Shown here piece after piece: positions 7,034 to 56,602 of a stretch of 64,000 nt of DNA (within the stretch, counting starts at the first letter, position 1; each line of letters begins with the position of its first letter). The notes below the pieces were generated by a model. That model was not told the origin of the DNA, made no database searches, and saw only the letters and a list, made by a program, of their open reading frames with translations. The DNA is from Nageia nagi. Its lineage: Eukaryota > Plantae > Pinophyta. Location: contig JBITNC010000002.1 in the NCBI GenBank assembly GCA_050084985.1, forward strand, positions 16,182,001-16,246,000, given 5' to 3'. Made by a program: the position numbers and the translations under genes.

Positions 7034-8502
7034 GGAGATGGAGGAAGTTTTCATAATAAATCAACTTTGACTATTCTTTAACATGGAACAAACAAAATCT
7101 CCAAATGCATTGTAGTATATTTAGCTTATATGGTTTCATATATATGGTTATATATGGTATTATGTTGTAGCGTGTTGTTTTTTATAGATAAATAAGTATT
7201 TTAGTGTCCTTTTGAACCCAATGGTTCATAGGATCTATCAAAGTTTGTCCAAATGTGAAGATATATCAATTAAGTATTTCAATGGTTGTTTCTCACGTAA
7301 TTAAGTTGTATAATAAAATCATAAAGCTTGTTTTGGTTATCTTGGTTTAAGAATTTGTAGATCAAGTTGTAATTACAAATATCTTTATAGGATTTCTTAA
7401 TATCTTTGGATAGTGGGCAAAAAAAGAGAAAATGAGTCTCATCCTCTATGGCATTTGGGTTACAGATTTTACAAATTATTTTATCTCAAGGTGGTTTTGG
7501 CATTGTTCATCTATTAGTTTTGCTATGAAGATATGTGAGTTAGTTATTAATTTTGCAATCACAAGTTTCTTTTTGAAAAAAATAATCTTATGTGAATAGG
7601 AAGGATGCTCAAGTTTTAGATGTTACAACATAGCAATTAACTATTTTACAATTAGGTGGCTCATCAAGTTAGGATGACATAATTAACTTATGTCATATGG
7701 TTGCATGATAAGGTGGTAGTGTTAAGAACCTAAAAGATCTTAAATAGAAATTTAACGTAAATAACTACAAATTTTAGCTTAATTAGAGAAACAACATAAC
7801 TTGAAATTTAAAAGAGCATAATATTAAGCAAAATGTAACAGAATGCAAGCGTGACATAACAAAAGGGCAAGCACGAAGTATCAGAAGTGCGGATGAATTA
7901 TTTTAGAAGTGTGACAGGTTATTAAGCAAATTATAGCTTAGCAAAGTTGTAATCTTGTCAAAATGCATCCGAAAGATATTCGAAATACGATGAATAAATC
8001 AAGATTGCGACCTGATCCAAAACCTTCAAGGAATGGAAAAGCGTGTTGATGCAAGAAAAACCATTCATAGAGGAGGCAATCGAGATGGTACTCAAGCTTG
8101 AATTCTCTAATGATAAGATTAGTATTATGATTTCAAAAAGTATAACAAAGAAGGAAGAGGAGGGGCTAAAATCAACCCTTATGAGCACTATGCAAAGGAT
8201 TGTCAAGAAAAGAAGAGGGATGAAGAAATGAGAGAAAAAAAAATGAAAAGGAGTCTCAAGATAAACAGAAAGAGCATGAGTGGAAATCAGTTCAAAATAA
8301 AAAAAACTGAAAAAAAAATCAAAAGAATACAACCAAAAAGCAGACAAAACTAACCACGTCAGAAAAACAGTCAACTTCAAAAGAAATCCAACATCAGAAA
8401 TCAACCACAAAAAACCCCTATGTAGTGCTATTAATTTTAGAAAGAATAGACAGAGAAACAACAAATTATAATACAAATTTTTCAAAAGATGAGACAACAA
8501 AA

Positions 8503-10314
8503 ATGGAAGTTGTGGAAGGGGAAGACCTGAAGCTTCTGGGCTTGGGAATCAAGTTCATTCCACGACCACCACCCATGACTGCTGACAGGATGCGTTTGGA
8601 GTTTAGAGCATTTGCTCGAAGACTCAGGCTACGCGTCTTTTTCGGTGATAAAGATGCCAACAGGGAAGCTGAAAATTGTCCAGAGCCGGAATATCATCGA
8701 GAGCTTCTACCTTTCCGCGGAGTATTCCCATTCAGTATGCCAAGGCCATGGTGGCATCCGCAGGAGGTAAATATGGATCTTGAAGAAGTGATCCGGAAGG
8801 GAGAACGTTTGTTCGTGGACCTTCTTTCCCGATGCTCTTTTGTTAAGCTTCCTCCACTTCCGCGCGGACTTATGAGAAGTCTGAAGCTTTTGCGCAAGGA
8901 TTCCAGCATTATCATCAAGCCAGCGGACAAGAATTTGGGCCTTGTAATTCTTGATCGCTCCTGGTATGTTTCAGAAGGATTAAGGCAACTTTCTGATGAG
9001 AAGGTTTATTGCAGGATTGCAGAGGTTCCTTGGAGGTTGATATGGCACAGGCTGAAGTACTACATCGGGCAATCCAAACTCTTCAAAGGAATTGAGGGTT
9101 TCCTTTTGAAGAATCCCATTTCCCGTGCGCGTCCTTGTGCATTCTTTTTATTACCCAAGATCCATAAGCCCGTATTGGTAGGGAGGCCCATCTGTTCTTA
9201 TACGGGTTATCTTCTTGAACCTACTTCTAGACTGTTGCATACACTTCTGTTACCTGTACTCCTTAGCCAGAAATTTCACCTCAAAGATTCTCTAACCTTG
9301 CTCAAAGAAGTCACCACGATTCAAGTCCCGCAGAGTTGCCTCCTCTTTACATTTGATGTTGAGTCCCTTTACCCAAGCATCCCCACACAAGCTGGACTTC
9401 AGGCACTTCGTTTCATGCTTTCTGCTTTCATGCTTCAGAACGGGCTAGACATGGGTTTGTTTGAACTCATCATCAGTTTGGCAGAGTTGGTTCTGACTGA
9501 GCACTATCTGGAGTTTAATGGAGGGATATTTAAGCAAATTCGAGGGACAGCAATGGGAAGTAACTTTGCTGTAGTGTATGCCTGCCTCTTCCTGTGCCAC
9601 TTGGAGATGCAGGTTACCGAAAGTTTTGATGCCTCCAATTTGCTTTATTACAAGAGATATGTGGACGATGCTTTTGGTATCTGGACAGGCTCTGAAGATA
9701 CTTTGCAGGATTTCTTCAGACATTATCAGAGCATTCATGCGGAAATCAAGATTACCCCTGTTGTCTCCTATTCGGAAGTGGATATTCTGGATGTTACTTT
9801 TTTCAAGGGGAGGAATTTTGATGTTACTGGAGTTCTTTCTACGAGGTGCTTTCAAAAGCCATTGAATGCCTACCAGTACATTCCGTACCGATCTTGGCAT
9901 CCTCTACATCAGAAAAGATCATTTGTTATCAACGAGCTACGAAGGTACCTACTCAGAGAGTCAGATCCTGCAGGCTTTCTGGAGCTGAAGAAGAACTTTT
10001 TCCGCAGACTTCGAGCAAGGGGTTACCCGGCCAAGTTTCTACTCTACTGTTTCAGCAAGGTCACATTGGGAGATAAAACGGAGCTTCTCTCTCGTTTGCA
10101 GTCAACTACTCGAGGGAGAAAGAGGACCCCCCTTGTCTTCAAGCTTAACTTTAGCAAATCCGCTAAAGACTTGGACTTGGGGGCCACCCTAAACCCTGAA
10201 CTACATCGGCTCTGCCAACAAGTTCCCGCTCTGCAATCCCTTCCACTCCCGATCGTGTGCTGGCGCAACCCAAGAAAATTGGGTAGTTTTTTGATGAAGA
10301 GTAGATTTGATTAA
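8503..10314 (+). CDS. Penelope-like element (PLE) reverse transcriptase, 603 aa from the ATG, with no GIY-YIG endonuclease domain
   Basis: Uninterrupted ORF with PLE-RT motifs in order: LGLGIKFIP, IKPADKN, LLPKIHK, GRPI, FDVESLYPSIP, QIRGTAMGS, RYVDD (YVDD 9658-9669), ILDV, YQYIPYRSWHP, RLRARGYP, WRNPRKLGSFL, then stop. The ORF track starts at GTG 8425, but the first ATG and the compositional shift are at 8503. Confidence 0.92.
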   Translation: MEVVEGEDLKLLGLGIKFIPRPPPMTADRMRLEFRAFARRLRLRVFFGDKDANREAENCPEPEYHRELLPFRGVFPFSMPRPWWHPQEVNMDLEEVIRKGERLFVDLLSRCSFVKLPPLPRGLMRSLKLLRKDSSIIIKPADKNLGLVILDRSWYVSEGLRQLSDEKVYCRIAEVPWRLIWHRLKYYIGQSKLFKGIEGFLLKNPISRARPCAFFLLPKIHKPVLVGRPICSYTGYLLEPTSRLLHTLLLPVLLSQKFHLKDSLTLLKEVTTIQVPQSCLLFTFDVESLYPSIPTQAGLQALRFMLSAFMLQNGLDMGLFELIISLAELVLTEHYLEFNGGIFKQIRGTAMGSNFAVVYACLFLCHLEMQVTESFDASNLLYYKRYVDDAFGIWTGSEDTLQDFFRHYQSIHAEIKITPVVSYSEVDILDVTFFKGRNFDVTGVLSTRCFQKPLNAYQYIPYRSWHPLHQKRSFVINELRRYLLRESDPAGFLELKKNFFRRLRARGYPAKFLLYCFSKVTLGDKTELLSRLQSTTRGRKRTPLVFKLNFSKSAKDLDLGATLNPELHRLCQQVPALQSLPLPIVCWRNPRKLGSFLMKSRFD

Positions 10315-10442
10315 TTAATTAATTAATTTTTTAATTAATTAATTAATTAATTAATAATTATTAATAATTAATAATTAATAATTTTATTAATTATTAATTA
10401 TTTAATAATTTTTTATTAAATATTTTTATTTAAATATTTATT
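10310..10442. repeat. 133-nt tract containing only A/T (TTAATTAA-rich), starting at the RT stop codon
   Basis: No G or C between 10310 and 10442. Confidence 0.9.
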
Positions 10443-10561
10443 GTAATAGGTTGGCAACACGGTTTTGTAATAAATTGCCAACACGGTTTGTAATGATTTG
10501 GCATTAATGCCAACACGGTTTGTAATAGGTTGGCATACGGTTATCGGTGCCGACACGGTTT
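10441..10561 (+). repeat. Minisatellite of ~5 imperfect units (TTGTAAT..TTG(G/C)CAACACGGTT) in the PLE 3' region
   Basis: ACGGTT core repeated 5 times; contains the perfect 16-bp palindrome TTGGCATTAATGCCAA (10498-10513). Confidence 0.85.
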
Positions 10562-10640
10562 AAGTTGTGGGTTTCAAGAAACCGTAACCCTAATTAGGGT
10601 TTTCGAGTTTCTTCTATAAATGTAAGGTTATGTACGAGTT

Positions 10641-10705
10641 TTCTCATAGAGTGCAACTGATGAGGAGTAAATCTCCGAAACCGGTCTTGCACAGCTCTTT
10701 GAGAA
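10641..10705 (+). ncRNA. Type I (minimal) hammerhead ribozyme
   Basis: Stem I GTGCAA (10651-56) / TTGCAC (10687-92), extended by AGA/TCT and TTCTCA/TGAGAA; core CTGATGA (10657-63); stem II GGAG-TAAAT-CTCC; GAAA (10677-80); palindromic mini stem III ACCGGT; GTC cleavage triplet (cut after 10686). The PLE context supports it. Confidence 0.9.
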
Positions 10706-12889
10706 GTAATTATAGAAATTTCCTTGATTTTTTCTATAATATTGTTCATTTTCCTTACATCCTTTTTGGAAGCTGCCAAGTGTTTTTCTTAATTTTTTAA
10801 GTTACCCTAATTTTTTAGAGTTTCTCATTGGCCTCAAAGGTTGAAGGGACCTCTTGACTCTTTTTTGTCCACTTCTCACTCTTGCACATTGGAGCTACAC
10901 TAGATGCTTCCCTTTTCTTATATGTATTTTTCTATAATCTCATTAACCAATTTTTGTCACCCACAAACATTAATATCGAATTTTAAATTACTCAATTGTA
11001 TTACTTGTGCTGGTATCAGTTGTTATTGTGATACAACTATGACATTGTGTATGATTTTTTTATATTGTATTAGCTGAATAGTAATATAATATCTTAAGAA
11101 AAAACGTATCCATAAACAACCTTGATATATACATCAATCAAACTAACAGGGGTTCATTGATCACTAAGCCCAATCTGATCGATGTGAAAATTTAATTTCG
11201 AAATTTACGAACAATAGGAACATTATAATTGTTAACAAAACACTACAATAGTTTTCAAAACAATCAACCTATGGACCAAGGACAAACGTACAAATCCACT
11301 CTACTGACTCGAGCAATTTGGAATGAATGCAATCAATGTTTGAAAATTTCCAAATGAAGAACTATTCTACACTAACACGGAACGGTTTGCAAACAATAAA
11401 GCGAGTAGAAGAGTGAGGAACAGACAAAATAGCATTGATAGGAGTTTTTTTGTCCAAGGTAGATGCGAAAAGAGAACCAATTATGCCTGCAGCAGAAGTA
11501 CCAATAGACACAGTCTGTTCCTTAATGCTATTCACGAGTTTCTTTAGAGAACAGGATTACAGTTGGAGGGGGTTAGCTTTTGTTGTCTATGGGTGGAGAC
11601 TAGACGGTCCCTGCATCTCACTATAAAATAGGTGGCTCAGTATGGATAATGTTACCATAAACCTGTCATGTGAATCCTTGAACTCACTGGAGGTATGGAG
11701 CAGGTTCCATGCAAGAGATACCTCCAATCCTTGAACTTAGTGGAGTTTTTTATTATATTGAAGTTCTTTAGCCCAACCACTAGGATTGACTATAATTTGT
11801 GATCGAGCCACCCACCAATAGATACAATTACTTTCAATTTCTATGACCTCGATTCAACTTTTATTATAATTTTAGCATTTGGAATCACACCAGAAAGCAT
11901 TAATTCAAGTTCACCAATAGCTTTCTTATTACTTAATTATCCACTTTTAATTCTATATTTGGAATAGGATTATTGATACTACTAGCTTAGATATGTATTT
12001 AAAAAAAGCATCAATCTTAATTCTTGGTAATGTGATATCCAACACAGACATCTCAAGACTGATAGTTCTCGACATTTTTAAATTATATATTTTTAATATC
12101 TATTTTAATAATATTAATTCTTTTAAATCAGTTTTTTGACTGACTAAATTATTATTTTTTAAATGTTCACAACCGAAAACCAGAGTCCAGTGACTATATA
12201 ACACCTCTGGGCATAACTAAAGAGTCCTCAGATTCAATTTTGGAAATGCTAGAGAAATTAGGCACTAAATAATTTACTTCAGTTCTAACTAATTTCAGTA
12301 GTGCAATTTCACTTGTACAGAATATGACTAGTGAATGGTAGAGAGTTTTAAACTTCAAAACATCACATGACACTTTCCTAGCTAACACTTTCAATTGTAC
12401 GACGATAAAATGAACGAGATTGAATGTTCCTTTTCACAAAATTAACCCGTCTGGTAGGTGCTACTTGGCAATCATTACCTTGCAAAAGCTATTAGAAAAC
12501 CAATAAAGCATAAAACCCTCCATAAGCATATAAATTAATTCAACAGTTCAACAATATGAATGCTCATTATATTATAGAGAAAAAAACTAAGTAATTCATC
12601 TGCCTATACGAGGAGAGATTATAGGAATTTAAAAAAAAAGGACTTCAAATCAGATGCATTGCATTCTATTACTCAAGTTCTTTAACTAATTGTGATTCCC
12701 AAAAATATCCTGTGCACGAAAGAGGATTAATAACTGGACTTCGTAGTTCTTAGTAAAGTTAGTACTATCTTAAGATACACCAAAAACATTGAAAGAAGAA
12801 TATCTTTTACAGTCATGCAGAACTTAAATTAGGTCAAGATTTACATTATAACTGCTAAAATTCCTGTGAAATAGATAAGGAACACACAG

Positions 12890-13355: not shown

Positions 13356-13485
13356 TTACCGTCTATTGACTGGTGGCTTCACTTTGTAAATCCTCACTAT
13401 CCAATTTGAGGTTGTGAATGCCTCCTCCAAGAACTCAAGCTTCACATCCTTCTTTCCTATTTCAACACCTCTGGCTCGATCCCAC
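13356..13485 (-). CDS. STT3B: STT3B coding exon 6 (last; G|WDRARGVEIG...KPPVNRR*)
   Basis: AG acceptor at 13487-13486; phase consistent with exon 5; conserved STT3 C-terminus LEEAFTTSNWIVRIYKV. Confidence 0.93.
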
Positions 13486-14585
13486 CTACAATATGACAAA
13501 GTATATAACTCATCAACCTCTATATAAGAAAATTCAAGCACGTGGCATTGGCATGAACAATATTTCCTAAATTACACGTTGTCACATACAGACTTAAATA
13601 ATGAAATGCAGAAAATGATAGCAAATGAAAAACAAAACATATTAACCAACATATGGGTTATAATTTGATTGAGTGGTTCACAAATGCAACAAATACAAAT
13701 AAGAATAGGCCCAAAGATACGAGAGATCCATCAGATGGTCCTTCGTCTTCCAGTTACTGCCTAAACATCAGATTCTTCTACTTAAGCACAGCCATTTAAC
13801 TTTGAGACAGCAATGCCTTTTTATGGATGCCACATATTAACTGAAGAAGTGCAAAAATCAACATTTCCAGTCCCTTCACTTTTAGTAGTGGATATGACAC
13901 AAGTCATGTCGATGACATATGTCATGAGATCTACTTATCCTTCTTATGAAGACTTTGGACAATCTGTTCCATCTATCACTCTGTTTGACATGTCAGTATG
14001 GATAAGACAGATTTGCACATTAGATTAATCCCTTTTATTTCTATTCATATCATACTGGTTTGATGCTTTGAACTCTAATTTAACAACTTTACTCGTACTT
14101 ATTTGGTCCAGAAAGGCAGTAATGGAACTTTGAAACTCTGCAACATGTTACAAATGGTTAATAGGCAGAAGAACATGGAGAAAAAAATGCAGACAATTTT
14201 TTTTTTGTTATGGTGACAAGCAGAGGTAAGAGCAGAAGCACGAATATAGGCAATAGCAGCAAGGGTTCTAAAAACAAAGATCCAAACCCGAAAGTTGAAA
14301 TGGGGAAACGCAGGAGGAATGGCAGCAGTAGAGGAAAGAATGGGGTCGAACAGGCTGTGGAAGCCTTGGGTTCGGACAAAATGGAAGGTGGGTGGCAGAG
14401 GGTTTGTCAATTGTATGACTTTCTCCACGTGAATGACATTGGTTGAAACAAAAAAGGACAGCGAACTTGTACCTGGGACGGTCTCTTCCGTGAAGGCAGA
14501 TGGAGGGGTTTTTGCCAGACTCTAATGGCTGATGCAAATCTGGGTCTGGCTGATGCGCCTATGCCTCACCCAAAGGTACCATTTT

Positions 14586-14968
14586 CCTGTTATCAAGGCC
14601 TCTCTTGGGTGCAGATGATGAATGGAGCAGAGGAGAAAAAAACCTTGGCTACCAACTCGGTCCTAGTGGGGGGCTTGGATTCGTTTGAACACGTAAGTGC
14701 ATTAGAAGCCAGCCTGTTATCAAGGCCTCTCTTGGGTGCAGATGATGAATGGAGCAGAGGAGAAAAAAACCATGGATACCAACTCGGTCCTAGTGGGGAG
14801 ATTGGATTCGTTTGAACACTAAGTGCATTAGAAGCCAGCCTGTTATCAAGGCCTCTCTTGGGTGCAGATGATGAATGGAGCAGAGAAGAAAAAGACCCTG
14901 GATACCAACTCGGTCCTAGTGGGGGGCTTGGATTCCTTTGAACACGTATGTGCATTAGAAGCCAGCCT
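14586..14968. repeat. Tandem repeat, 3 x ~127 bp, in STT3B intron 5
   Basis: Unit CCTGTTATCAAGGCC...TAGAAGCCAG starts at 14586, 14713 and 14839. Confidence 0.92.
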
Positions 14969-15220
14969 CAAGAACCAAATTTTCGGAAAGAGGTCCTATG
15001 GGCTGTGAGAGATGGGGTTTTGGAAACCCTAGTAAGTTGTTCGGGCATCTTTTTCTGTCCACGATATAAAGGGGGAAAAGGAGAAATTCCCTTGCTTCAT
15101 TTGCAAAGGTGCGAACAGACAACCCTCCGCTCAGTTGGTAGCTAGATGCATGTGAGCAGCTTAGCCCTGTTGCGAAAGTTTGGCTGCTCCCTATAGAAAC
15201 GAAGGGTCCCATCTCCAGTA

Positions 15221-15301
15221 GGCGGATTTATCTCCGAAGATCTATAGCTCTAATTCTGAAGGACGGATTTATGTCTGAAGATCTATAGCTCTATCTCTAA
15301 A
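15221..15301. repeat. Tandem duplication, 2 x ~41 bp (CGGATTTAT..CGAAGATCTATAGCTCTA)
   Basis: Two adjacent near-identical copies. Confidence 0.75.
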
Positions 15302-15779
15302 GATAATATTTATTTTTCTAGAGCTGTTAAAAATACAAAAGGAAGGCCTACAGGTTGGGAAGCGATTTCCTGTGCCGAGGATCAGAAGATCTCCAACTGA
15401 AGAAAGGAGATCAGAGGCAGGGTTTAATTTTATGTCTTCAACAAGTCAACAAACGAAGGCAGGCGGTGGGGTTGACGGCCATGTTTGATTAAGGTTTTTG
15501 AAACCCTAAAAGGTCTGCTGATCATTTTCCTCTGCCCACAAGTCTGCCCAAGATCTGAAGGGGAAATACGAAAAATTACATCTCAAATGTCAGTGATGAC
15601 CAGACAGTCCTTCCAGTCAGGGGGGGCTTGTGGGTGGCTGTCCAAAGGCAGGAAAAGGGTTTCAAACCCTGTACATCTCCGGAAACCCATTTTCGGATAT
15701 CTCTTACCGGAGTTCTCCAAATAGCAGAGATCTCTTGAATCGATTCAGATCTCTGGAAACCCTTGTTCCAAGTACCTTT

Positions 15780-18087
15780 TATTGTGCCTTCACAATACGT
15801 CCCAAAATTGACAATTTTGAGGATCAAACTTTTTGCCAAGTCATGATCATCAACAAGCTAGAGTCTCACCTCATCTTATCATACTCATTCGAAACCCCAC
15901 TGAAAACCAAGTATTGTACATTCCTCCCAGTCACAGTGATGATGAACCCATTCTTGAAGATATCCAAAATTGACTAAATATGGAAGATAGGAGAGTCTGG
16001 GGAGCAGTGTTTAGATAGGAGACTAATTCCTAGAACCTGAAAATTTGACTAAGTGTCTCAAGAGGTGCTAGTGCGAAAGTTTAATCTTTTTCTCGGATAC
16101 ACTCAAGAGACAGGGCAAAAAGGAAGGTTGATGCAATTTTCAAAAAGATAAGATTATGACTTTTCAAAGCATGCACCTGGTTAGGAGTAGTCCCCGGATG
16201 GAACAAAGGTGTTCAAACTGCAAAATTTGTGACTTTTAAGAAGAATTTTCAAGCAAGAAAATGGCTAAGGTATGGAGCACATCGGGAAAAAAGACAAGAT
16301 TATGACCTTTTAAAATATGCACTCAGATGAAGAACACCCAGGGAGTGAGCAGTGAGCACATGTTTCAAAAAGACATAATTATGACTTTTTAAAACATGCG
16401 CCTGGCTTGAGGGACCTTCCAAGTGAGTCTGACATGAAAATTTGGCTAAGGCATGACTTCGAAACATCGAAAGTTGGCTCAAGTTTGCACAAGGAGGTTG
16501 GTGCAAGTTTGAAAAGACGAGTATGACTTTTCAAAACATGCGCCCAGCACAAAAGGCTCCCCAATTCAAGTGCATGATCAAAAAATACAAGATCGTGACT
16601 TTTCAATACATACGCCCCAAGTCAGGAGGACACCAAGATGGCATACGACTAAGGCACAACTTTAGGACTTCAAAACGACCTCAAAATTACTCCAAAAGAG
16701 AAGCGCATGTTTCAAAAAGACATAATTATGACTTTTTGAAACGTGTGCTTAAGGTGGAGATGCTCTTAGTCCAAGCACATGATCTCAAAAGACAAAATCA
16801 TGACTTTTTAAAACATGCACTCAAGGCAAGAGAGCTCCAAGACCAATTCAAGTGGCAAAATGACTAAGTATGAGCCTCCGAAGCACCCAAATTGACTCAA
16901 AATCACCCCATGAGATGAGTGCATGCTTCAAAAGGACAAAATTATGACTTTTCAAAACGTGCACCCAAGATGTGGTTATCTTCAGGTCAAGCGCATGTCT
17001 TCAAAAGACAAAAATGTGCCTTTTTTACGCTTGCGCCAAGCTCAAAAAGGTCTCCAAAGGATTCCAAGCTGCAAAATTGGCTAGGTGTTGTTCGAAAAGA
17101 GAGGAGAGCATGGTTCCAAAAGACAAAACTATGGCTTTCAAAAACATGCACTCAAGGTGAAGAAGGCTCCCTAGTCCAAGCGCATGAATAAAAAAGATAG
17201 AATCATGACTTTCTAGAGCGTGTGTCTAGCCAATGAAGTTGCCTAGAGGGGTTTAAAGTGAAAAATTGACTAAGTATAGGTCTCAGAAGTATCAAAACAA
17301 GCAAGAGCCACTTTGTGACTCTTGTAAGTGAATGTTGTGCATGACTTAATCAAATCAAGACTTGTTTCACTTAATGGGATTGTAGCCTTGAGTACTTAGT
17401 GCTTACTTATGGTTGTTATATGATTTGTGTGCATTTCTTGCAAGTGTATGCTTGTTAAAAAGTTGAATGAATATCTTATGAAGTTGTATGATTGCTATTT
17501 GACAAACATTGTCTATTGTTCCGCATATAAATGGATGTAAGCTAGTGAAATTCTTCCTATGTCATTTGGCTTGGAATGTTGCTCATGTTATTGTCATTAA
17601 CAAAACTGCTATAGGCTCCTTCTTACACGCAATTTGGACTTAGTCATTTGTGGTAGGATTGGATGAGTAGGTAAACATTTCATAATTAACCTAGGAAGAA
17701 AGTGATCTAGCCACTACACCATTAGTGAACTTGTCCTTGAATGCACTCCCATCGAGTGCCATCATCCCCAAGTTGCACTTTACTTTACCTTTTAGTTTGT
17801 TATTTTCTTTCTTTTTTAATTCTAAAAATTCTATCCTCTCAATTAGTGTGAAACAACCCCAAGTCCTACAGCAAACATGGTTAACAGTTGTTATCTTTAT
17901 CCTTCCACTGAGTATTCTAAGAATAACTACTATCACCATCACAAAAGACATCTTATGATACTAGAAACCTTGGCCTATCCAGTCCTTACAAGTGGAGGTT
18001 AGTAACGCAACCTCACTCACATGTTGGATGCCCATTCTCGTTATCACCTAGGTGGTCTTCATAAGTGGAAGGAAAAACATCCCACAA
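15780..18087 (+). mobile_element. Internally deleted solo LTR (same family as the 1-6029 element) in STT3B intron 5
   Basis: Same degenerate tandem motif as 1-760 at 16140-17230; 17311-18087 aligns with 5250-6029; flanked by candidate TSD CCTTT (15775-79 / 18088-92); starts TATTG (decayed TGTTG). Confidence 0.7.
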
Positions 18088-18477
18088 CCTTTCAATGCCT
18101 TAAAGACAAAACAAGGAAAAGAAAAGGACCCTACAAGCCCTGATGCTTGTTTGTTCTATTTTTTAGGAACTATTTTATGAACTTTCCTGAAGATCATTCT
18201 AAGTATAACTACTATCACCATCACAGAAGACATCTTATAATAATAGAAACCTTGGCGTACCCAGTCTTACAAGTGGAGGTTAGTAACGCGACCTCACTCA
18301 CATGTTGGATGCCCGTTCTCGTTATCACCTAGGTGGTCTTTGTAAGTGGAAGGAAAAACATCCCACAACCTTTCAATGCTTGGCAGACGAAACAAGGAAA
18401 AGAAAAAGACCCTACAAGCCCTGATGCTTGTTTGTTCTATTTTTTAGGAACTGTTTTATGAACTTTCCTGAAGATCA
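17914..18477. repeat. 282-bp tandem duplication spanning the LTR 3' end and its flank
   Basis: Copies start at 17914 and 18196 (ATTCTAAG...CCTGAAGATCA). Confidence 0.9.
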
Positions 18478-20098
18478 CTCTATGACATTGTAAATGTTTT
18501 TGGGGACACTTACAAAACCCACTCTTTGCACTTATCAAAAAATAAATGCAGTCAAGGAACTTTCACAGTAATCGACACTAGACACCAACATGATCACATT
18601 TGAAAATTGATTCTAAGAACTTGTTCTGCCATTTGAATAGGGTGAATCTTGTTAACAATTTTTCATATTCTTCACTCTATATATGCACATTTAGTGTGGA
18701 TTCCAGCATTCTTTCAACACATCATCAAATAAAACTAGATTCCCTATTTGAGGGTACATATTACCATTTGAAATGACTACTCACAAAACAAAAACAAGCA
18801 TTCCCTACCATACAAATAAATGGATATTTAAGGCTTTTGGCCTCTTCACATAATGTGCAATAATACAAAATAACTACCCAACAGCATGGCTCTTTCTTCC
18901 ATGTTTTGAACCATCAAATATTTCTGCTAAAATACTATTTTCATACAAATTCCAATCAAAATAGCATTGACTTGAGAAATCTAACTTGATAAGGAATTTC
19001 TTACATACCATTCATCCTTGCTTCATTTAAAGGTGAGCCTCTTGTGAATGCATAGTATTGTGCCATGTGTAGTGTTTTACCCTATGTGAACACATTATCA
19101 ACTATCCATGGATGAGATTAACATGGTTCTTCCCTAGAAAACCATGTAGGCAATATTGTTTTCTAAGATAAGAAACCACCATGTGTGCAAGCAAACTATT
19201 TGTATTGCTGTGTATGTGATGTGAATAGTCTGAATGCTGAAAGCTATATACCTATTTCATGAGCAACCAGTAAATTAAATGAAGAATGGATTTAACCTTC
19301 CCCCAAGATGAGACTATTTGTCATCACTGGCAACCAATAAATTGGCTATACCTCCAGATGCTTGTATATTTAATATTACATAAAAATCATCAAGATTGTA
19401 CGTTAACCGTATAATCTTAAAAGGCATAGTTTACAAAATGTTGATGGGAAAAATACCCCAATGGAAAATATGGAGATTCTTCATGAACGTTTGTATAGCA
19501 ACATAATCAGGTTACAAACTCTTTCTTTCAAATAATATGCCATTGTCAGGAATTTTCTCCATGAAGCCAAGAAAGTTAATCGAATACAACATGAACACTG
19601 GCTGAAACACATGATTAAATGCTAAAAATGAGTGACCAATATTTGAGTGTGGCCATGGAGTTTACACATTCACATCTTCAATCATAAAAAAGCGATATTT
19701 TTCCACTGGTGCATGTTCGATGCACTAGGATCCACCCACCCCTCTAACAGAAGAAGAGTTGGAAGTGATGTGAGCAATAAGATGCTATTTGGTTGGCATT
19801 TTGTTTCTCTCCACTAGTTGTCCTAATGGATGTCAAATTTGACAAGGATAGTCAGCATTAACTAGTTAAGTTGTTATTTATTGTTTACCATCCAGGCCAC
19901 TTTGATTAGGACAGTTAATGTGAGGTCTGGTTATCTCCTACTCTATTTAGCTGATACAACCAGAGGTACCTTAAAAGATTCATACTTTCAATCTTTTTAT
20001 TCACTCATATTTAATACAGGTTTATTAATGTATCTGGCATTTCTAGCTCAAGTAACACAATTATGCTCTGTTAATATTAATATGACCTATATTTTCAA

Positions 20099-21157
20099 TG
20101 GAAAATTACTAAAACAACCCTCACAAAATCAATTTTTACAAAAATGACCCTCTTAAATTGTATATTACAAAAGTAACCCTGTGGTCAACCTGCCAATATT
20201 TTTTTGGGTCTCACTCAGTATTATTCAGCGCAAGAGAACATATCTCATGAAGTTTTGATGATCACTTGATGTTCTTTGCAGAGCTGAGGCTGAACGACAT
20301 AGCCCCTGCAAAGTGCTCTTTTTCCACTGCCCTCCACAACTGACATTGCTTCGGAAGAGAAGCTCCTTTACATTAACAATAGATCTCTCCAAACCCACAA
20401 TCGTCTTGATACTTCGTAGGAATGGTATCACATGGTGTGGTATACGAACCATTCTCTTCCATACTAGAACAATCAAATAAATCATGTGTAAACGTTTATT
20501 GAAGCATCATGGAATTGCGAATGGGGTTTGTATTTAGGATGAACGCTTGTTTGAAGATGATTTCATTCAGCATGTTGCTTATCTCTACTGTAGGCTGATA
20601 AACATTTCTAAGCTCTGTCATGAACCTTCTAGCAATCAGCAGTTAGTGGGCAACATCAACAAGAGCGAGTCACTGATCTCTTTCTCCACCTTGATAATAT
20701 GACCTGCACTATAGTTAAGAAGCAAATTAAAGGTCCCAATATTATCACATTTCTTGATCAGTCTGCAGGTCTGATAAGCGTATTGTACAATTGATGAACA
20801 AGAGCAATTTCTGTATCTTTGGGCTATTGCAGATCCATTACGCAAATCTCACAAATAGTCGGGTTAGGGCAGTGAGCAGGGAATTGACTCTAGCAATTTG
20901 ATTTCAATATCTTTTATCTTCGCAGTAAAAGATATTGTTTCCTATCTCCATATAAAGGTTTTGCCAGATTTGGATGAAAGACTTGCTACCACACGTTTTG
21001 ATTACTTGAAGAGTATGAAAATCAAATTACATCGAGTTAGGTAAGGAGCTATGGCGTTCAGCCTCTGCTCTACTAAGAAGTCATTTTTGTAATTAACAAT
21101 TTAAGAGCGTTATTTTTGTAAATATTGATTTTGTGAGGGTCATTTTAGAATTTGCTC
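20099..21157. mobile_element. Mutator-like non-autonomous element (Pack-MULE) in STT3B intron 5
   Basis: ~80-bp imperfect TIRs (20099-20180 vs 21078-21157, sharing ACCCTCACAAAATCAAT...TTACAAAAAT...CTCTTAAATTG) and an exact 9-bp TSD TATTTTCAA (20090-98 / 21158-66). Confidence 0.88.
20300..20910 (-). pseudogene. Captured fragment of an RPW8-NBS-LRR (ADR1-like RNL) gene: RPW8 domain, linker and start of NB-ARC
   Basis: Minus-strand translation with frameshifts: PTICEI; LIKKCDNIGTFNLLLNY..HIIKVEKEISD (RPW8-like); MLNEIIFKQ..NSMMLQ*..DLFD (linker); IVGLERSIVNVKELLFRSNVS..EGSGK (pre-P-loop and broken P-loop). Confidence 0.72.
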
Positions 21158-21650
21158 TATTTTCAACCCGATTACCTGGTAAGGATTTTTAGCGATTCTT
21201 AGAAGTTATAACTATGTAGTGTGCATATCCAATGCATGAGAATCAAACAAATGCTAATGGAAAGTCAACTGTCTTGGAGATAAACAATTTAATTATCAAC
21301 TGACGGAATAAATGTTGATGGCAAGTAAATACATAGTAGAAGCTGGCCTAAGATATCAATAAGTTTTCAAAGAGGGCAATATGAATAGGTGTAAGTAAAT
21401 TACCTAAAATAATTCAATAATGGGGTTAAGTAAGTAAGTTAAAATTGTAATACCTCAAAACATTGGGGCAACAGATAATGAACTCAATACAAACCTACAA
21501 ATTAACTAATAATGCATGCAGAAGACAGACAAAAATAAAATATCTTTCTTGGCATGCATTGAACAACACTTTTTGCAATTCAATAAGAGTTATAAAATAT
21601 CTTTCCGTTTCCAAATTTACAATACATAAAAAATAAACGATAATGCTTAC

Positions 21651-21710
21651 CCAGGCGGCCTTCCATATTCTGTAGTAAGTTCCCCAAACCTATAGTAGCA
21701 TAATTTATAC
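21651..21710 (-). CDS. STT3B: STT3B coding exon 5 (YKLCYYRFGELTTEYGRPPG)
   Basis: CAG acceptor and GTAAG donor, phase consistent; missed by the ORF track. Confidence 0.92.
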
Positions 21711-21858
21711 CTGACAATAGAAACAACAAGAGTTAACAAGGATTTAAATTGTAAAAACCTAACCTGAAACTGAACAAGCACTGTAGACCCAATAATATGT
21801 GTGGTACTTTACTAGATAAAAACACATGCAAATTATTATTTGAAGCTAAATTACTTAC

Positions 21859-21981
21859 ATGAGACAGTCCAGCATTTTGGGAGCTGCCCCTTTGTCAACA
21901 CGATACTCTCCGTTAACAAGGTAATCAGATTCCTTGATAACAGGAAAGACTCCACCTCCAATACGAACCATCCACAAAAAT
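21859..21981 (-). CDS. STT3B: STT3B coding exon 4 ([41 protein letters not shown])
   Basis: CAG acceptor and GTAAGT donor; completes the DINKFLWMVRI motif. Confidence 0.93.
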
Positions 21982-22175
21982 CTGAAGATTAAATTGTCAG
22001 TTAGAACTAGCCAACATACTAACAGTGGACGTCATGTTCAATGACAGAAAAATGAAGACCCAGAATATCATATTGAAAATGTTATATTTAAGCAAAAATC
22101 CAAAAATAAAAAAGCAAGCACAGAAATGGCATTCACAACTCAAACAGGAAATATAGCAAGTGTTTATTAATATAC

Positions 22176-22630
22176 TTGTTGATGTCATCAGAAGAATAAC
22201 CAGTAACTCCTCCAAATACAACCAACACATAATCCACATCAAGTGATTGCATGATGTCATATGCTTCATGCTCATATGAAGACATAGCCCGCCCAACTGT
22301 GGCAATATGTGTGTTATTCCATGTGTTGTTGTCTACAATAACAGTTCTGTTTCCCATAGCTGTGATTTGATATCCATAATCCCACCATGACATCACTTTG
22401 GCATCAGGAGCAGTATTTTGCCGCAGCCAAAAGTATGCTTCACGATAATCATCAAAAATAACCCTGTCCCCATGTGCACCCCTAGCAGCCAGAACAATAG
22501 AAGGAGATGAATATGCCTCTGAAGTCACCCAGGTACAGTGGGTGACATAACTTGTAAGCAAGTAAAGCATTCCTAAGATCAAGATACCAGCACCATTTCT
22601 CTGGAAAGGTAAACTCTGATCTACCAAAAT
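22176..22630 (-). CDS. STT3B: STT3B coding exon 3 (contains WWDYG)
   Basis: [10 protein letters not shown] and DNNTWN motifs; CAG/GT boundaries. Confidence 0.96.
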
Positions 22631-22715
22631 CTGAAAATAAAATAGTCTTCCTCAATAACTATGCCACTTTCATAGTTAGTAGATGATACAAATAAGGTCT
22701 AATAAATTACCAAAT

Positions 22716-22871
22716 AAATACCAGATTATAAAGGGCATAGTAAACATGATATATTTCCATAAAAACTTCTAGATAGTACCAGTTCCAAATACCAAAAAAA
22801 TACCAGATTATAAAGGGCATCGTAAACATGATATATTTCCATAAAAACTTCTAGATAGTACCAGTTCCAAA
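22716..22871. repeat. Tandem duplication (period 82 bp) in STT3B intron 2
   Basis: AAATACCAGATTATAAAGGGCAT...CCAGTTCCAAA at 22716 and 22798. Confidence 0.88.
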
Positions 22872-24273
22872 ATTATTTGGAAACATTCAGCGAAACAGAT
22901 GCTGTGAATATTAAAAATTTTAAAAATATGATGAATTCAAGAAGTTCTAACTAACTTACTTTTACAGAGCTTTGGTCTAAATGAATAACTACATTAATAT
23001 GTCTAGCAATCATTTCATGAATATGTAGGTTTTATTAAATGTATGAACTTCTTGCAATTACACATCAATCAGAACTAGAAACATGAGAAAGACCAATTTC
23101 AAAACCAATCAACTAGTTATCATCCATCTAATTATAAATAGTTTTCATTGCAGGCCAAATGCAGAAAAAAACATCTCTCAAAATTTCGTGCTCAGGTCTC
23201 TCTGAATAAAATCCAAAAGTAAGGAAAGCAGGTCCTATTCATAAAGATGATTACCATGTAATTGCTAGAATAATAGACAATGAAAAAGAAAACACAGAAG
23301 AATAATAGTCTAGGCCTATATATACATAAAAATTAAAAACATAACTATTGTTATTTTACTAAGAATTTTATTTCATTGTTCAAACTTCATAACAACATGT
23401 AAACAGGAAAATTATATACAACATGTGAGAAACATCCTAGTGTGCACTGGATTTGTTCGCACTTGTCCTATTCTCTTTAACTGTGTAATTTGATGTAGCA
23501 AATATATTAATGATTTAATTATACTAGAAGTGACACTGCAGAATTCTGCAAGATGATCAATAACTAAAGAGAAAAATACTTGTCATGTGAAGTTATGTTT
23601 TGGGCAGTAATAAATTTTGATTGGGAAACAAATTCAAACTCATTATTCTTCAAATTACATTACTAGGAAAACCTCAACGGAAAATTTAAACATCTTACCA
23701 CTCCAATAGACAAATTAGATAGAGTTTGCTATATGCAATCACACAGGAATAATCTGCAACATTTCATTCAAAAACTTTTCTGAAAGTCAAGAGTTTACAA
23801 AGAGAAATATGAAACAGCAATATATCTAAATCTAGATGATATTAACTGAATAAAGGGAAGAGAAGTTTTGGATATCAAGGACCTAGACAAAGTACACAAA
23901 AGATTTCGATGAAAATTAAGCAAGTGTGTCAGTCAACACAAATAGACTGTATATGTGGGCAAGAACTGCTAAAAAAAACTTATGAGGCAAATGAGAACAT
24001 TAAGAAGGATGAAGTCTTAACATGAACATGCTACAACTTGTACTTTGTAAATACACAAGGTTACGAAAAAACCAAAAAAAACATTCTACGTGCTTGAAAC
24101 TTTGGAAAGACTACATTGCAGTAAAAAAGTTGTTTGAACAATGAAATGTCACTCCTATGGATGGGTTAATATTACGGTTATTAATCCTCCAAGCAACTTC
24201 AAATTAGTCAGCAATCACCAATGAAAACTCTATTTAATGTTTGACAATTAAATTTAAAATCATTTTTCATTAC

Positions 24274-24810
24274 CTTTGCAGATGCTTTCACATTACTTGA
24301 ACCTTTACTTGCAACTGTAGATGGGGTTTTTGGCTTGCTACGAAATAGAAGAGCCAAGTTCTTCACACTTGCAGATATTGCAATGGCACTAATAAGGCAA
24401 ACAGCAGGTGTTGCCACAAGGATCAAACGAACCATCACTCCAGCAAAATATAAACTAGTGAGACCATATAGAACAATAAAAATGGTGGCATCTGTTAATC
24501 GTCGGAAGCAAAAGTACAACCCTGCTGGAAAGAAAATTAACAATATGTGAAAGTCGAACATAAAAGATGACCAGGCTGTTGGTTGATGCTCTGAGACAGA
24601 TGCAATGATTGGGATATGGTCCTTTGCATATGTCGGATCAAGAAGAGAATAGAAACGACCAGTCCAGGGAGAAATGTAGCCGGATGCCATGCCCAGTCCA
24701 AGTGCTAGTGCACCTACACCCACTGCACTTGACACAGTTATACTAAGGAAAGTCTGAAATAACTTCGGGTCATCAAGCTGGTGTTTAACCCAATCTACAA
24801 AGTAAAATAC
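24274..24810 (-). CDS. STT3B: STT3B coding exon 2 (contains SVSEHQP)
   Basis: VFYFVDWVK...IIASVSEHQPTAW...; CAG/GT boundaries, phase 0. Confidence 0.95.
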
Positions 24811-26115
24811 CTGATATCAGAGAAAAGCTACATCAGTATTATATTGAGTATCTGCTTAGTCGCTGACAAAAGATAATGTAGAAAAGAACTCAACATTATC
24901 ACTCACATAATACTTCATATAAAGGCAGAAAGTACATAAAACCAGTGCTCCAAGAAAAGAAAATGTTAATGAAGGCATTACTGGTAGTCCTTAAAGGTCT
25001 AGGAGACCAGGAAAAAATAAAGTAGTTAGTGCATTAACTTTTCCATAGGAGCAAAGATGAAGATCAAGATTTGAGAAACAAAACATCAGTGAAAAAGAAT
25101 TTTACTAAGTATGGGACAATATAAAAATTTCCCTTCCACTCGAGACATGTTCTAAACACGTATAATTTGTATGTCAATATTAAATGCATGAGGTCATATG
25201 GGAACACGCTGGGACTGTACCATGTTTCTCCTTGCATAAATTAGACAAAACTACTGGCTAATACATGCAAATAAAATGTAAATGTTACCTTTCAAGAATA
25301 TAGATATATGTTGGATGGAAAACAAAAAGTGGTAAAGAATACGAACAGTACTCTAAATCATGTGTTGGAATCTAGGCATAGAGATTAATGATAAATTGTT
25401 GAATTTGCACTACGTAGTTTAGCTGTGGAATGCAAAATCAAATGATTGACATGTTGCTACAGGAGGTTCACCAAATCATTGTTGATAATTCAAGAAAACC
25501 GTGAAAATAATTGTAAAATCACCATTATCGCCTGAAAAGCCAGAGCATGTCATCTTGAAAGATTTCTTTTAAACTTCTAGGGAATTTTAAATAAGTCAGT
25601 TCACGTTATCTGTTACATAGGAGCTTGGCCTCCCATGGTTTGTATTAAGACTTAATTTGATGGACAGCATATAAAAGAATAACCCCAACCAGTTATTTTT
25701 AATAATCAGAAAACAGAATAGCTCAAGAGAGTCATCATTCCATATCATTTCAATACAGTTTCATACCACCCAGCAGGGTTCAATTCTAAGGCACATCTGC
25801 CTTGCCCCAAATGACATTTGAACAAAATGGACGACAACAGAAGCAGGATTCAGGTACTATAACATAGTACGAATCCCACAGACATGACATCTTCAAAAGA
25901 AAAGTTTTATTCTAGGTCAAAACTAATCAACACAACCAGAGATGCACAAGACTCCCTTGATGTACTACACTTTAGAGTGATTCGCTCAAAGTAGCATCAC
26001 AATTGATTTTATCCCTTTTACTGAGTTTTGGTTAATCATGCATCTACCTATCTAGAAATCCATTTGATGCAATGCAGTCCCACTTAAATGAATTAAAAAC
26101 AATTATTGAACTCAC

Positions 26116-27018: not shown

Positions 27019-27380
27019 TGGAAATCCTTAAATCAAATTGTTGCCACAGAAATGGATTGCTGCTCAGCGGATCTTGATCTTCTTCATATGCAACAATGTT
27101 GAAACCCTACGTGATCCGCAAATTTAGTTACAGATAATGAAATTGATGGGAGGGAAACGCGAATCGCCATTGAGGATAAAAGGTGTGAGAAAATCTACAG
27201 ATCTAAAGATTTATTTACCTGAAAATTGCAGCTTGGGCTTGGGTTGAAGCTTCGAACCCTCGTTAAACCCTGGCTCCTCGGAGTGCTGTGAGGTCGTCTA
27301 GATCCATTGTTTAACTCAGTTTAAGGTTAGAGACAAAAAGTTTATAATGGGAAATACACTGGACTAAATGTAGGGTTTGC
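27019..27380 (-). promoter_or_regulatory. STT3B 5' UTR/promoter with a probable 5'-UTR intron and telo-boxes
   Basis: Candidate donor CAG|GTAAAT at 27219/27218; telo-box AAACCCTA at 27102-09 (+) and 27371-78 (-). Confidence 0.45.
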
Positions 27381-33532: not shown

Positions 33533-33795
33533 TGTTAGAATTTGTAATGAAATATTGTGAATATCTAAACTCCTTGTAAATTCAATTAATCACTTAAGGG
33601 TATGTAGATACCTTAAGAGATTAATTGAATTCTTTAATATGTAAACTTTAACCTACCAACTAACCACTTGGTAAAGTCAAAGTCTACATATTAAAGAATT
33701 CAATTAATCTCTTAAGGTATCTACATACCCTTAAGTGATTAATTGAATTTACAAGGAGTTTAGATATTCACAATATTTCATTACAAATTCTAACA
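33533..33795. repeat. 263-bp palindrome (111-bp perfect arms) made of two head-to-head LTR 5' ends
   Basis: 33533-33643 is the exact reverse complement of 33685-33795; imperfect pairing continues to an ~8-nt loop. Confidence 0.95.
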
Positions 33796-34570: not shown

Positions 34571-34615
34571 TCAAACAGGCCTCTTAGAGGTGAAGTTGTC
34601 ATCACTAACAAAAGT

Positions 34616-56188: not shown

Positions 56189-56602
<414 letters not shown>

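What the first reader, a model, noticed from the sequence alone, without database searches (positions are those of the whole stretch)
8503..10705. Intact endonuclease-less Penelope-like RT coupled to a hammerhead ribozyme and telomeric seed: an Athena/Terminon-like system in a seed plant
Seen: a complete PLE RT (N-terminal LGIKFIP motif through thumb, YVDD intact) stops right after the WRNPRKLG motif, where endonuclease-containing PLEs continue into a linker and GIY-YIG. No GIY-YIG is recognisable upstream either. Downstream lie an AT tract, a minisatellite, an AACCCTAA palindrome and a hammerhead ribozyme. Known: conifer Dryad PLEs carry a C-terminal GIY-YIG and Chlamys/Naiad carry an N-terminal one. 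EN-less PLEs (Athena/Terminons in bdelloid rotifers, Coprina in fungi) prime on exposed chromosome ends and carry hammerheads and telomeric repeats near the 3' end. Inference: this may be an undescribed EN-less PLE lineage in seed plants that copies itself at telomeres or DNA breaks, or a domesticated RT.
Basis: partly seen in the sequence, partly recalled or inferred. Interest (0 to 1): 0.92.

Follow-up and report, generated by a model that had tools for sequence, protein, structure and literature searches.

The report
Endonuclease-less Penelope-like retroelement copy, plant genome
This is a real, head-truncated copy of a Penelope-like retrotransposon that has no endonuclease and carries a hammerhead ribozyme; it belongs to an old plant lineage of such elements whose relatives sit at telomere repeats, a kind so far reported in plants only from the spike moss Selaginella.

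Summary
An open frame at 8311-10314 (+) encodes a full Penelope-like reverse transcriptase (RT) that stops after WRNPRKLG. No GIY-YIG endonuclease (EN) exists in any frame of the window. A minimal type-I hammerhead ribozyme (HHR, 10651-10692) lies 337 nt after the stop.

"Intact" needs a caveat. The family's N-terminal motif is degenerate, there is no in-frame ATG before 8503, and there is no ORF1 or 5' hammerhead. The copy is 5'-truncated, solitary and interstitial, about 2.5 kb beyond the 3' end of an STT3B gene.

The RT falls in an all-EN-less clade: Closterium, then Selaginella, then Ginkgo, Picea and Cryptomeria plus this window. The C-terminal-EN clade lies on the far side of the tree, so this is not a Dryad or a truncated EN+ element.

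In 54 of 80 related metagenomic loci the same hammerhead follows the RT on the same strand, with covariation and an always-palindromic loop 3. A TATA box sits 36-42 nt upstream of it. Some relatives form head-to-tail chains, carry CCCTAAA stretches after the ribozyme and abut (CCCTAAA)n arrays.

This copy's own telomeric seed is only 7-9 nt, which is not significant.

Verdict: a new, seed-plant member of the known telomere-associated EN-less PLE kind. Other windows of this genome carry unchecked notes of similar elements.

The parts
8311..10314 (+). Stop-free reading frame holding the Penelope-like RT. Homology to relatives starts near 8419. There is an in-frame GTG at 8425 and the first ATG is at 8503. 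The stop is at 10312-10314.
8419..8502 (+). Degenerate N-terminal part of the RT. The family motif RIxNxxIHNLS reads RIDRETTNYNTNFS here, with a 5-6 aa insertion, and no ATG lies in front of it. This is the 5'-truncated or decayed head of the element.
8545..8556 (+). GxKF/Y motif (GIKF), a PLE-specific N-terminal motif.
   Evidence: motif named in PMC8557442
9658..9669 (+). RT catalytic motif C (YVDD).
10186..10197 (+). A 12-nt C-strand telomere-like stretch inside the ORF, encoding the conserved peptide TLNP. Locus L001 has 14 nt at the same place.
10261..10284 (+). C-terminal WRNPRKLG motif. The protein ends 9 residues later, as in the EN-less relatives.
10307..10440 (+). AT-only tract of (TTAA)n type directly after the stop. 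L001 has a comparable AT tract in the same position.
10441..10561 (+). Minisatellite of 4-5 units of 24-32 nt with core TGCCAACACGGTTT, able to form hairpins.
10576..10613 (+). Imperfect palindrome centred on AACCCTAA/TTAGGGTT. This is 8-9 nt of plant telomere repeat, not significant alone.
10615..10621 (+). TATA box (TATAAAT) 42 nt upstream of the ribozyme core. It is conserved at 36-39 nt (51-54 nt in a few) in related plant-clade elements. It is a predicted outward-facing core promoter.
10641..10705 (+). Minimal type-I hammerhead ribozyme. The core is 10651-10692, helix III is 1 bp with the palindromic loop CCGG, and the predicted cleavage is after C10686.
10801..10825 (+). Second copy of the segment GTWACCCTAATT..TTTTMGAGTTTCT that also stands at 10584-10612. 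It is a short terminal redundancy bracketing the TATA-plus-ribozyme module and is the likely 3' limit of the element.

Best explanation
The stretch from about 8419 to about 10825 (+) is a 5'-truncated, solitary, interstitial copy of an endonuclease-less Penelope-like retroelement. Its family is an old, apparently vertically inherited streptophyte lineage, seen in Closterium, Selaginella, Ginkgo, Picea and Cryptomeria.

A full unit in relatives reads: hammerhead, then short C-strand telomere stretches, then ORF1, then RT, then a tail of 0.1-1.1 kb with a TATA box, then hammerhead. Units form head-to-tail chains and abut (CCCTAAA)n arrays.

Inferred mechanism:
- The RNA carries C-strand telomere-like stretches next to the ribozyme.
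- These anneal to a G-rich 3' overhang, or to another free 3'-OH at a break, which primes reverse transcription without any endonuclease.
- Copies therefore end up 5'-truncated.
- The TATA box in each tail starts transcription at the ribozyme and reads into the next unit.
- The ribozymes, which have a 1-bp helix III and a palindromic loop, probably cut only as dimers and trim transcripts to unit length.

This copy keeps the RT and the 3' module. It has lost ORF1, the 5' ribozyme and its start codon, so it is probably not mobile on its own.

Shown here: the anatomy, the absence of EN, the clade, conservation of the ribozyme and TATA box, and telomere junctions in relatives. Inferred: the priming mode, promoter activity, cleavage and the age of the copy.
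For: The ORF is open and the motifs are present.

No GIY-YIG occurs in six frames of 64 kb or in upstream segments by Pfam. Of 250 relatives, 196 have neither an N- nor a C-terminal extension.

FastTree on 225 rows and IQ-TREE on 54 rows both place the window with Cryptomeria (99-100*). That group sits inside Ginkgo plus Picea (98*), then Selaginella (99*), then Closterium (99*). The C-terminal-EN clade is on the other side of the tree. A Picea glauca protein, KUM45112.1, belongs to the cluster of P0009.

A covariance model of the ribozyme hits 54 of 80 related loci, and all 58 hits are on the RT strand. Forty-three of them lie 128-1077 nt after an RT end (median 359); in the window the distance is 337 nt. 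Covariation is present in helices I and II, and loop 3 is self-complementary in 17 of 17 sequences.

A TATA box lies 28-50 nt upstream of the core in 21 of 30 distinct plant-clade ribozyme regions, against a 2.6% background, and in 0 of 10 distant loci.

In relatives, CCCTAAA stretches follow the ribozyme. L037 ends in 11 repeats, L038 starts with about 15 repeats, and in L009 the same tail runs into the next unit's ORF1. L018, L019 and L022 each carry two units.

CpG observed/expected is 0.55 in the ORF and 1.3 in the tail, against 0.33 for the window, which fits a younger insert.

No second copy, ORF1 or 5' ribozyme exists in the window.
Against: - This copy is not at a telomere. Its telomere-like motifs are only 7-9 nt, which is not above chance.
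- Its 5' and 3' limits are not fixed, because no second copy of the same family was available.
- No reads or RNA data could be obtained, so copy number, expression and cleavage are untested.
- No labelled Athena, Coprina, Neptune, Dryad or TERT sequences could be put in the tree. Membership of a named EN-less clade rests on architecture, not on phylogeny.
- The related loci with telomere junctions come from unidentified organisms in metagenome assemblies, and they are only 38-47% identical to this RT.
- The related loci are not phylogenetically independent, so the TATA P-value overstates the evidence.
Confidence: 0.8

Rival explanations
1. A domesticated host gene: a PLE-derived RT kept by selection for a cellular function, with the ribozyme and tail as relics.
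For: The frame is open over 667 codons among decayed transposons and has less CpG loss than its surroundings. NCBI lists the Cryptomeria homologues as 'uncharacterized protein LOC...' genes.
Against: Cryptomeria has at least five diverged paralogues. The whole 3' module (AT tract, TATA box, ribozyme) is kept as in mobile relatives, which form chains and telomere junctions. The N-terminal motif is degenerate and the family's start codon is missing. Synteny could not be tested.
Confidence: 0.07
2. A truncated or rearranged endonuclease-containing PLE (conifer Dryad with C-terminal EN, or Chlamys/Naiad type with N-terminal EN) that lost its EN in this copy only.
For: 5' truncation is real, so an N-terminal domain could in principle have been lost. 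Dryads are known in conifers (PMC8557442).
Against: The protein ends at the same residue as 196 of 250 relatives. Relatives with complete N-termini have no EN: their N-extensions gave no hit to the EN model and none in Pfam. There is no CxC motif. The spacing between RT motifs A and B is 63 aa, like canonical PLEs (median 60), so there is no IFD. The C-terminal-EN clade is separated by starred branches.
Confidence: 0.02
3. Contamination or misassembly: the segment is foreign DNA, or was joined wrongly to plant sequence.
Against: The nearest relatives are plant proteins from Cryptomeria, Picea, Ginkgo and Selaginella. A plant STT3B gene ends 2.5 kb away and plant transposons surround the element. 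Base composition shows no abrupt foreign block beyond the coding region's higher GC.
Confidence: 0.02

Closest known systems
Telomere-associated endonuclease-deficient PLEs of the Coprina type, including the Selaginella moellendorffii elements (Gladyshev & Arkhipova 2007, as cited in PMC12477314, PMC4209133 and PMC8557442)
   Same: There is no GIY-YIG and the RT ends after the thumb. A hammerhead lies near the 3' end. Copies are 5'-truncated. Relatives carry short C-strand telomere stretches next to the ribozyme and abut telomere-repeat arrays. A Selaginella protein (LOC112343723, 42% identity) is the basal named member of the same clade.
   Different: The host is a seed-plant-like genome, and the nearest kin are in gymnosperms. 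This copy is interstitial. The ribozyme is the minimal, dimer-type form with a 1-bp helix III, whereas PMC4209133 reports canonical hammerheads for Selaginella PLEs. A TATA box sits at a fixed distance from the ribozyme. Placement with labelled Coprina sequences was not tested.
Athena elements and Terminons of bdelloid rotifers (Arkhipova et al. 2017, as cited in PMC8557442 and PMC12477314)
   Same: The RT is EN-less. The ribozyme is adjacent to reverse-complement telomere stretches. Relatives form head-to-tail chains at telomere repeats.
   Different: Terminon units are giant (over 40 kb) with many ORFs and captured genes. Here relatives have units of about 5 kb with ORF1 plus RT, and the window holds only an RT and a tail. 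The host kingdom differs.
Dryad, the EN+ Penelope/Poseidon subclade of conifers (Lin et al. 2016, as cited in PMC8557442, PMC9370799 and PMC10473749)
   Same: Both have a PLE RT, and PLEs in general carry hammerheads. The host group is the same as that of this RT's closest named relatives.
   Different: Dryads carry a C-terminal GIY-YIG, insert genome-wide and are thought to come from arthropods by horizontal transfer. This RT has no EN and lies across the tree from the C-terminal-EN clade. Its relatives follow the streptophyte species tree, which suggests vertical descent.
PLE-X, EN-less offshoots of Chlamys in Selaginella and Chara (PMC8557442)
   Same: Both are EN-less, occur in the green lineage and have hammerheads.
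   Different: PLE-X keeps the CxC motif, the IFD and an N-terminal extension behind an intron, and in spike mosses it targets 28S rDNA. Here there is no CxC, no IFD and no sign of rDNA.

Membership tests
Penelope-like elements (RT) | RT with the PLE N-terminal motifs (GxKF/Y, DKG-type), RT motifs through the thumb, and thousands of PLE homologues | tested here: met
   GIKF is at 8545-8556, the DKG-type motif reads ADKNLG, and YVDD is at 9658-9669. HMMER found 17,662 hits, 1,904 of them at E<=1e-30. Pfam RVT_1 is only weak.
Penelope-like elements (RT) | Hammerhead ribozyme in the flanking repeat | tested here: met
   The ribozyme at 10651-10692 scores 39.9 bits with a model built from relatives. 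The same motif follows the RT in 54 of 80 related loci.
Penelope-like elements (RT) | Pseudo-LTRs or partial tandem structure | tested here: inconclusive
   Only a 25-29-nt redundancy is present (10584-10612 and 10801-10825). There is no 5' repeat or 5' ribozyme in the window. Relatives such as L004 and L067 have ribozymes on both sides.
Endonuclease-deficient PLEs (Athena/Coprina kind) | No GIY-YIG endonuclease in the element | tested here: met
   The EN model gave only noise on six frames of the whole window. Pfam found nothing in upstream segments. The protein ends where 196 of 250 relatives end.
Endonuclease-deficient PLEs (Athena/Coprina kind) | Location at telomeres, with the 5' end capped by telomere repeats | tested here: not met
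   This copy has no telomere array at either side. It sits about 2.5 kb from the STT3B stop codon, more than 14 Mb from either end of the piece according to the scan's index. Relatives L037 and L038 do meet this feature.
Endonuclease-deficient PLEs (Athena/Coprina kind) | Short reverse-complement telomere stretches at or near the 3' end, next to the ribozyme | tested here: inconclusive
   The window has ACCCTAA-type motifs of 7-9 nt at 10586-10602 and 10804-10810, flanking the ribozyme, which is not above chance. Relatives L008, L009, L010 and L037 have 4-6 stretches of 12-15 nt after the ribozyme.
Endonuclease-deficient PLEs (Athena/Coprina kind) | RT groups with labelled Athena or Coprina sequences in a tree rooted with TERT | not testable with these tools
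   No labelled reference sequences could be brought in. Cluster look-ups gave names only for plant members.
Dryad (EN+ Penelope/Poseidon of conifers) | C-terminal GIY-YIG with a CCHH motif, and an RT inside the C-terminal-EN clade | tested here: not met
   No EN is present. The C-terminal-EN clade (99-100*) lies on the other side of both trees.
Chlamys / Naiad / PLE-X | N-terminal GIY-YIG or its remnant, a CxC motif before GxKF/Y, and an IFD (about 20 extra aa between RT motifs A and B) | tested here: not met
   No cysteine occurs in the open frame before GIKF. The A-B spacing is 63 aa here, 58-63 in the clade and 60 (median) in canonical EN+ PLEs. N-extensions of relatives do not match the EN model.
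Terminons | Giant composite units with many ORFs around an Athena RT | tested here: not met
   The window holds only the RT and a 0.5-kb tail. Relatives have units of about 5 kb with ORF1 plus RT.
Hammerhead ribozyme, type I, minimal PLE form | Conserved core (CUGAUGA, GAAA, UH cleavage site), helices I and II, and a short helix III with a small palindromic loop | tested here: met
   The core and helices can be read directly. Pairs covary across 17 sequences and the loop is palindromic in 17 of 17. The form is described in PMC4209133. Rfam's own models do not reach any threshold.
Hammerhead ribozyme, type I, minimal PLE form | Self-cleavage | not testable with these tools
   This needs in vitro transcription of monomer and dimer constructs, or RNA end mapping.

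The most novel reading that the evidence does not exclude
Seed plants, at least gymnosperms and this genome, may keep an active, vertically inherited lineage of endonuclease-less Penelope-like elements that add themselves to chromosome ends or breaks. Each unit's tail would carry an outward TATA promoter that fires directly into a dimer-dependent hammerhead. Chains of units would then transcribe one another and be cut to unit-length, possibly circular, RNAs. That would be a plant counterpart of rotifer Athena chains and of the 3'-promoter logic of Drosophila telomere elements.
Probability: 0.3. Interest if true: 0.8.

Novelty: new member of a known kind. Interest (0 to 1): 0.6.

Why it matters
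EN-less PLEs are the closest retroelement relatives of telomerase. In plants they have been documented only in Selaginella, and a 2025 review still calls telomere-associated transposons rare in plants.

Three things follow if the same lineage runs from a charophyte alga through a lycophyte to Ginkgo, spruce, sugi and this genome:
- PLEs in seed plants would not be only the horizontally acquired Dryads.
- Seed plants would become usable for study of endonuclease-independent, telomere-primed retrotransposition.
- There would be a concrete, testable RNA module: a TATA box at a fixed distance from a dimer-type hammerhead.

Tried and rejected
- Rfam, at the gathering threshold and at E<=10, did not report the hammerhead. 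The motif was confirmed by hand and with a model of my own.
There are no data on copy number, expression, RNA ends or misassembly.
- Gladyshev & Arkhipova 2007 and Lin et al. 2016 are not held in the library. They are cited only through papers that are held.
- Two IQ-TREE runs with the mixture model on 95 rows did not finish. An LG+G4 quick tree on 54 rows was used instead.
- Cluster look-ups gave no names for the EN+ clades or the other unnamed clades, so named PLE clades could not be mapped onto the tree.
- The RT gave nothing in a PDB sequence search. A profile search gave only a group II intron RT at E = 0.47.
- ORF1 proteins of relatives have no match in the window and no Pfam domain.
- A second hammerhead-like hit at 43770-43819 (E = 0.014) lacks the GAAA core and was rejected.
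- The STT3B exon-1 search showed a land-plant gene, 89-90% identical to angiosperm fragments, but could not name the species or separate gymnosperm from angiosperm.
Full report
**What is there**

The ORF listing finds one long ORF on the + strand, 8425(GTG)-10314, of 629 aa. It is the longest stop-free segment in the window. The frame is open from 8311.

The protein has the Penelope-like (PLE) hallmarks: a GxKF/Y motif (GIKF, 8545-8556), a DKG-type motif (ADKNLG), RT motifs A, B and C (YVDD, 9658-9669), a thumb, and WRNPRKLG at 10261-10284, nine residues before the stop. Pfam gives only a sub-threshold RVT_1 match. A full HMMER scan finds 17,662 homologues, 1,904 of them at E<=1e-30.

Downstream lie an AT-only tract (10307-10440), a 24-32-nt minisatellite (10441-10561), and an imperfect palindrome centred on AACCCTAA/TTAGGGTT (10576-10613). 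Then comes a type-I hammerhead: helix I is 10651-10656 with 10687-10692 (extendable to 10641-10705), followed by CUGAUGA, a 4-bp helix II, GAAA, a 1-bp helix III with loop CCGG, and cleavage after C10686.

**Two corrections to 'intact' and 'telomeric seed'**

Alignment with 14 relatives and tblastn with relatives' RTs show that homology starts near 8419, upstream of the only in-frame ATG (8503). The family's N-terminal motif RIxNxxIHNLS is degenerate here (RIDRETTNYNTNFS, plus a 5-6 aa insertion). The RT is complete from GxKF to the end, but the head of the gene has no start codon.

The telomere-like palindrome is 8-9 nt. The window holds 28 matches of at least 8 nt to the plant telomere repeat, so this motif is not above chance by itself.

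**No endonuclease**

I built an HMM from the C-terminal extensions of 29 EN+ relatives; it shows the GIY-YIG core with its flanking cysteines. I ran it with all filters off on every stop-free segment of all six frames of the 64-kb window, and nothing scored better than E = 1.3. Pfam finds nothing in the upstream segments.

Of 250 relatives, 196 have neither an N- nor a C-terminal extension and end within a few residues of this protein's end. The N-extensions of 26 relatives, including the 400-480-aa Closterium extensions, do not match the EN model, and the subset scanned (three Closterium proteins among them) has no Pfam domain there.

There is no cysteine in the frame before GIKF, so no CxC motif. 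The spacing between RT motifs A and B is 63 aa, against 58-63 in the clade and a median of 60 in canonical EN+ PLEs, so there is no IFD. This rules out a truncated Dryad and a Chlamys, Naiad or PLE-X element.

**Where it belongs**

The best hits are proteins of about 600 aa from the following organisms:
- Cryptomeria japonica, 56-61% identity, at least five loci.
- Picea glauca, KUM45112.1, in a 46% cluster.
- Ginkgo biloba, two gene models.
- Selaginella moellendorffii, LOC112343723, 42%.
- Closterium, 36%.

FastTree on 225 rows and IQ-TREE (LG+G4) on 54 rows agree. The window groups with Cryptomeria (99-100*), then with Picea and Ginkgo (98*), then with several unnamed lineages (97*), then Selaginella (99*), then Closterium (99*). 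The C-terminal-EN clade lies on the other side of the tree.

The order follows the streptophyte species tree. That suggests old vertical descent, unlike the horizontally acquired Dryads (PMC8557442). I could not add labelled Athena, Coprina or TERT sequences, so the name of the clade stays open.

**The ribozyme and a promoter-like box are part of the element**

A scan of metagenome contigs returned 80 loci encoding relatives. A pattern search found the same minimal hammerhead in 24 of them. A covariance model built from 17 distinct examples found 58 hits in 54 loci, all on the RT strand. Forty-three hits lie 128-1077 nt (median 359) after an RT end; the window's distance is 337 nt. Others lie about 2.9-3.2 kb before an RT start, with an ORF1 in between.

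Across the 17 sequences the four inner pairs of helix I and helix II are 98-100% paired, with many double changes. My search required pairing, so that figure is biased. Loop 3, which was not selected for, is self-complementary in 17 of 17, with six different tetranucleotides. This fits the dimer-type minimal hammerhead of PLEs (PMC4209133). That paper reports canonical hammerheads for Selaginella PLEs, so the minimal form seen here differs from that report.

A TATA box lies 28-50 nt (mostly 36-39) upstream of the core in 21 of 30 distinct plant-clade ribozyme regions, and at 51-54 nt in five more. The background is 2.6%, and none is seen in 10 distant loci. In the window it is at 10615-10621, 42 nt upstream. 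The loci are related, so the P-value is inflated, but the sequences around the box are diverged.

**Telomere link in relatives, not in this copy**

In L008, L009, L010 and L037, four to six C-strand stretches of 12-15 nt follow the ribozyme by 250-500 nt. L037 then runs into 11 perfect CCCTAAA units at the contig end. In L009 the same tail runs into the next unit's ORF1. L038 begins with about 15 units in front of an RT. L018, L019 and L022 each carry two ORF1-RT units in a row. This is the arrangement described for Athena and Coprina (PMC8557442, PMC12477314).

The organism behind these contigs is unknown. Its RTs sit inside the plant clade.

In the window, ACCCTAA-type motifs flank the TATA-ribozyme module, at 10586-10602 and 10804-10810. 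They are part of a 25-29-nt direct redundancy (10584-10612 and 10801-10825) that probably marks the 3' end. No array is present.

The window has no second copy, no ORF1 and no 5' ribozyme.

**Context**

A plant STT3B gene lies on the minus strand: exon 1 at 26116-26961, the WWDYG exon within 22136-22651, and the last coding exon within 13359-13571. The element is about 2.5 kb beyond its stop codon, in convergent orientation.

By the positions in the scan's index, the window is more than 16 Mb from one end of the piece and more than 14 Mb from the other.

CpG observed/expected is 0.55 in the ORF and 1.3 in the tail, against 0.33 for the window. This agrees with a younger or less methylated insert.

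**Interpretation**

The best reading is a 5'-truncated, probably immobile copy of an EN-less PLE family that elsewhere attaches to telomere repeats. How an EN-less element reached an interstitial site is inferred only. Priming at a break, or at an interstitial telomere-like tract, is the usual proposal.

The outward TATA box suggests that each tail drives transcription through the ribozyme into the next unit. From my own knowledge, this resembles the 3' promoter of Drosophila HeT-A. Unit-length RNAs cut at two ribozymes are a further inference.

Domestication, a truncated EN+ element and contamination are each unlikely, for the reasons given under the rival explanations.

**Literature**

Papers in the library report EN-less PLEs in plants only for Selaginella (PMC12477314, PMC4209133). 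PLE-X is reported in Selaginella and Chara (PMC8557442). PLEs of conifers are treated as EN+ Dryads (PMC9370799, PMC10473749). Four searches found no report of EN-less PLEs in gymnosperms or other seed plants. The library is not complete.

**Limits**

The host species was not identified. The STT3B exon shows only that it is a land plant, 89-90% identical to angiosperm fragments. Other windows of this genome carry unchecked notes of EN-less PLE chains with telomere repeats. I could not read those sequences.

Noticed in passing
window 13359-27027 (-): A plant STT3B (oligosaccharyltransferase) gene with long introns. Exon 1 is at 26116-26961, the WWDYG/DNNTWNN exon lies within 22136-22651, and the last coding exon within 13359-13571 ends ...WIVRIYKVKPPVNRR. 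The PLE lies about 2.5 kb past its stop codon, on the other strand.
   Followed up: partly
window 56192-56602 (-): A stop-free segment whose first 59 translated residues read as canonical histone H3.
   Followed up: no
window 52520-52630 (+): A degenerate interstitial telomere-like array of about 110 nt, in G-strand orientation (TTAGGGTTTAAGGG... variants). No PLE RT homology lies nearby.
   Followed up: partly
window 10186-10197; L001 2149-2162: The conserved RT peptide (A/T)LNP, about 40 residues before the C-terminus, is encoded by 12-14 nt of perfect C-strand telomere repeat in both the window and L001. This may be chance, or an internal telomere-complementary site. An unchecked note on another window (s1-846863) describes telomere capping at such a motif.
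   Followed up: partly
window 43770-43819 (+): A weak match (16.3 bits, E = 0.014) to the hammerhead model. It has CUGAUGAG and a helix II but no GAAA core, so it is either chance or a decayed relic.
   Followed up: yes
cluster of P0009: A 612-aa member of this EN-less clade is deposited as Picea glauca ABT39_MTgene4059 (KUM45112.1), a locus tag that reads like a mitochondrial-genome annotation (not checked). One 24-kb JGI contig holds six members of the same 90% cluster, which suggests a chain of units.
   Followed up: no
L004, L008, L018, L019, L022 (related loci): Relatives carry an ORF1 of 520-880 aa upstream of the RT, with no Pfam domain. The units stand head to tail.
   Followed up: partly
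P0024, P0028, P0032, P0034 (Closterium): Closterium members of the clade have a 400-480-aa N-terminal extension. It has no Pfam match in the proteins scanned and no match to the GIY-YIG model.
   Followed up: partly
window 33100-42400 (-): Copia-type polyprotein fragments, matched by copia ORFs of loci L033, L057 and L058.
   Followed up: no
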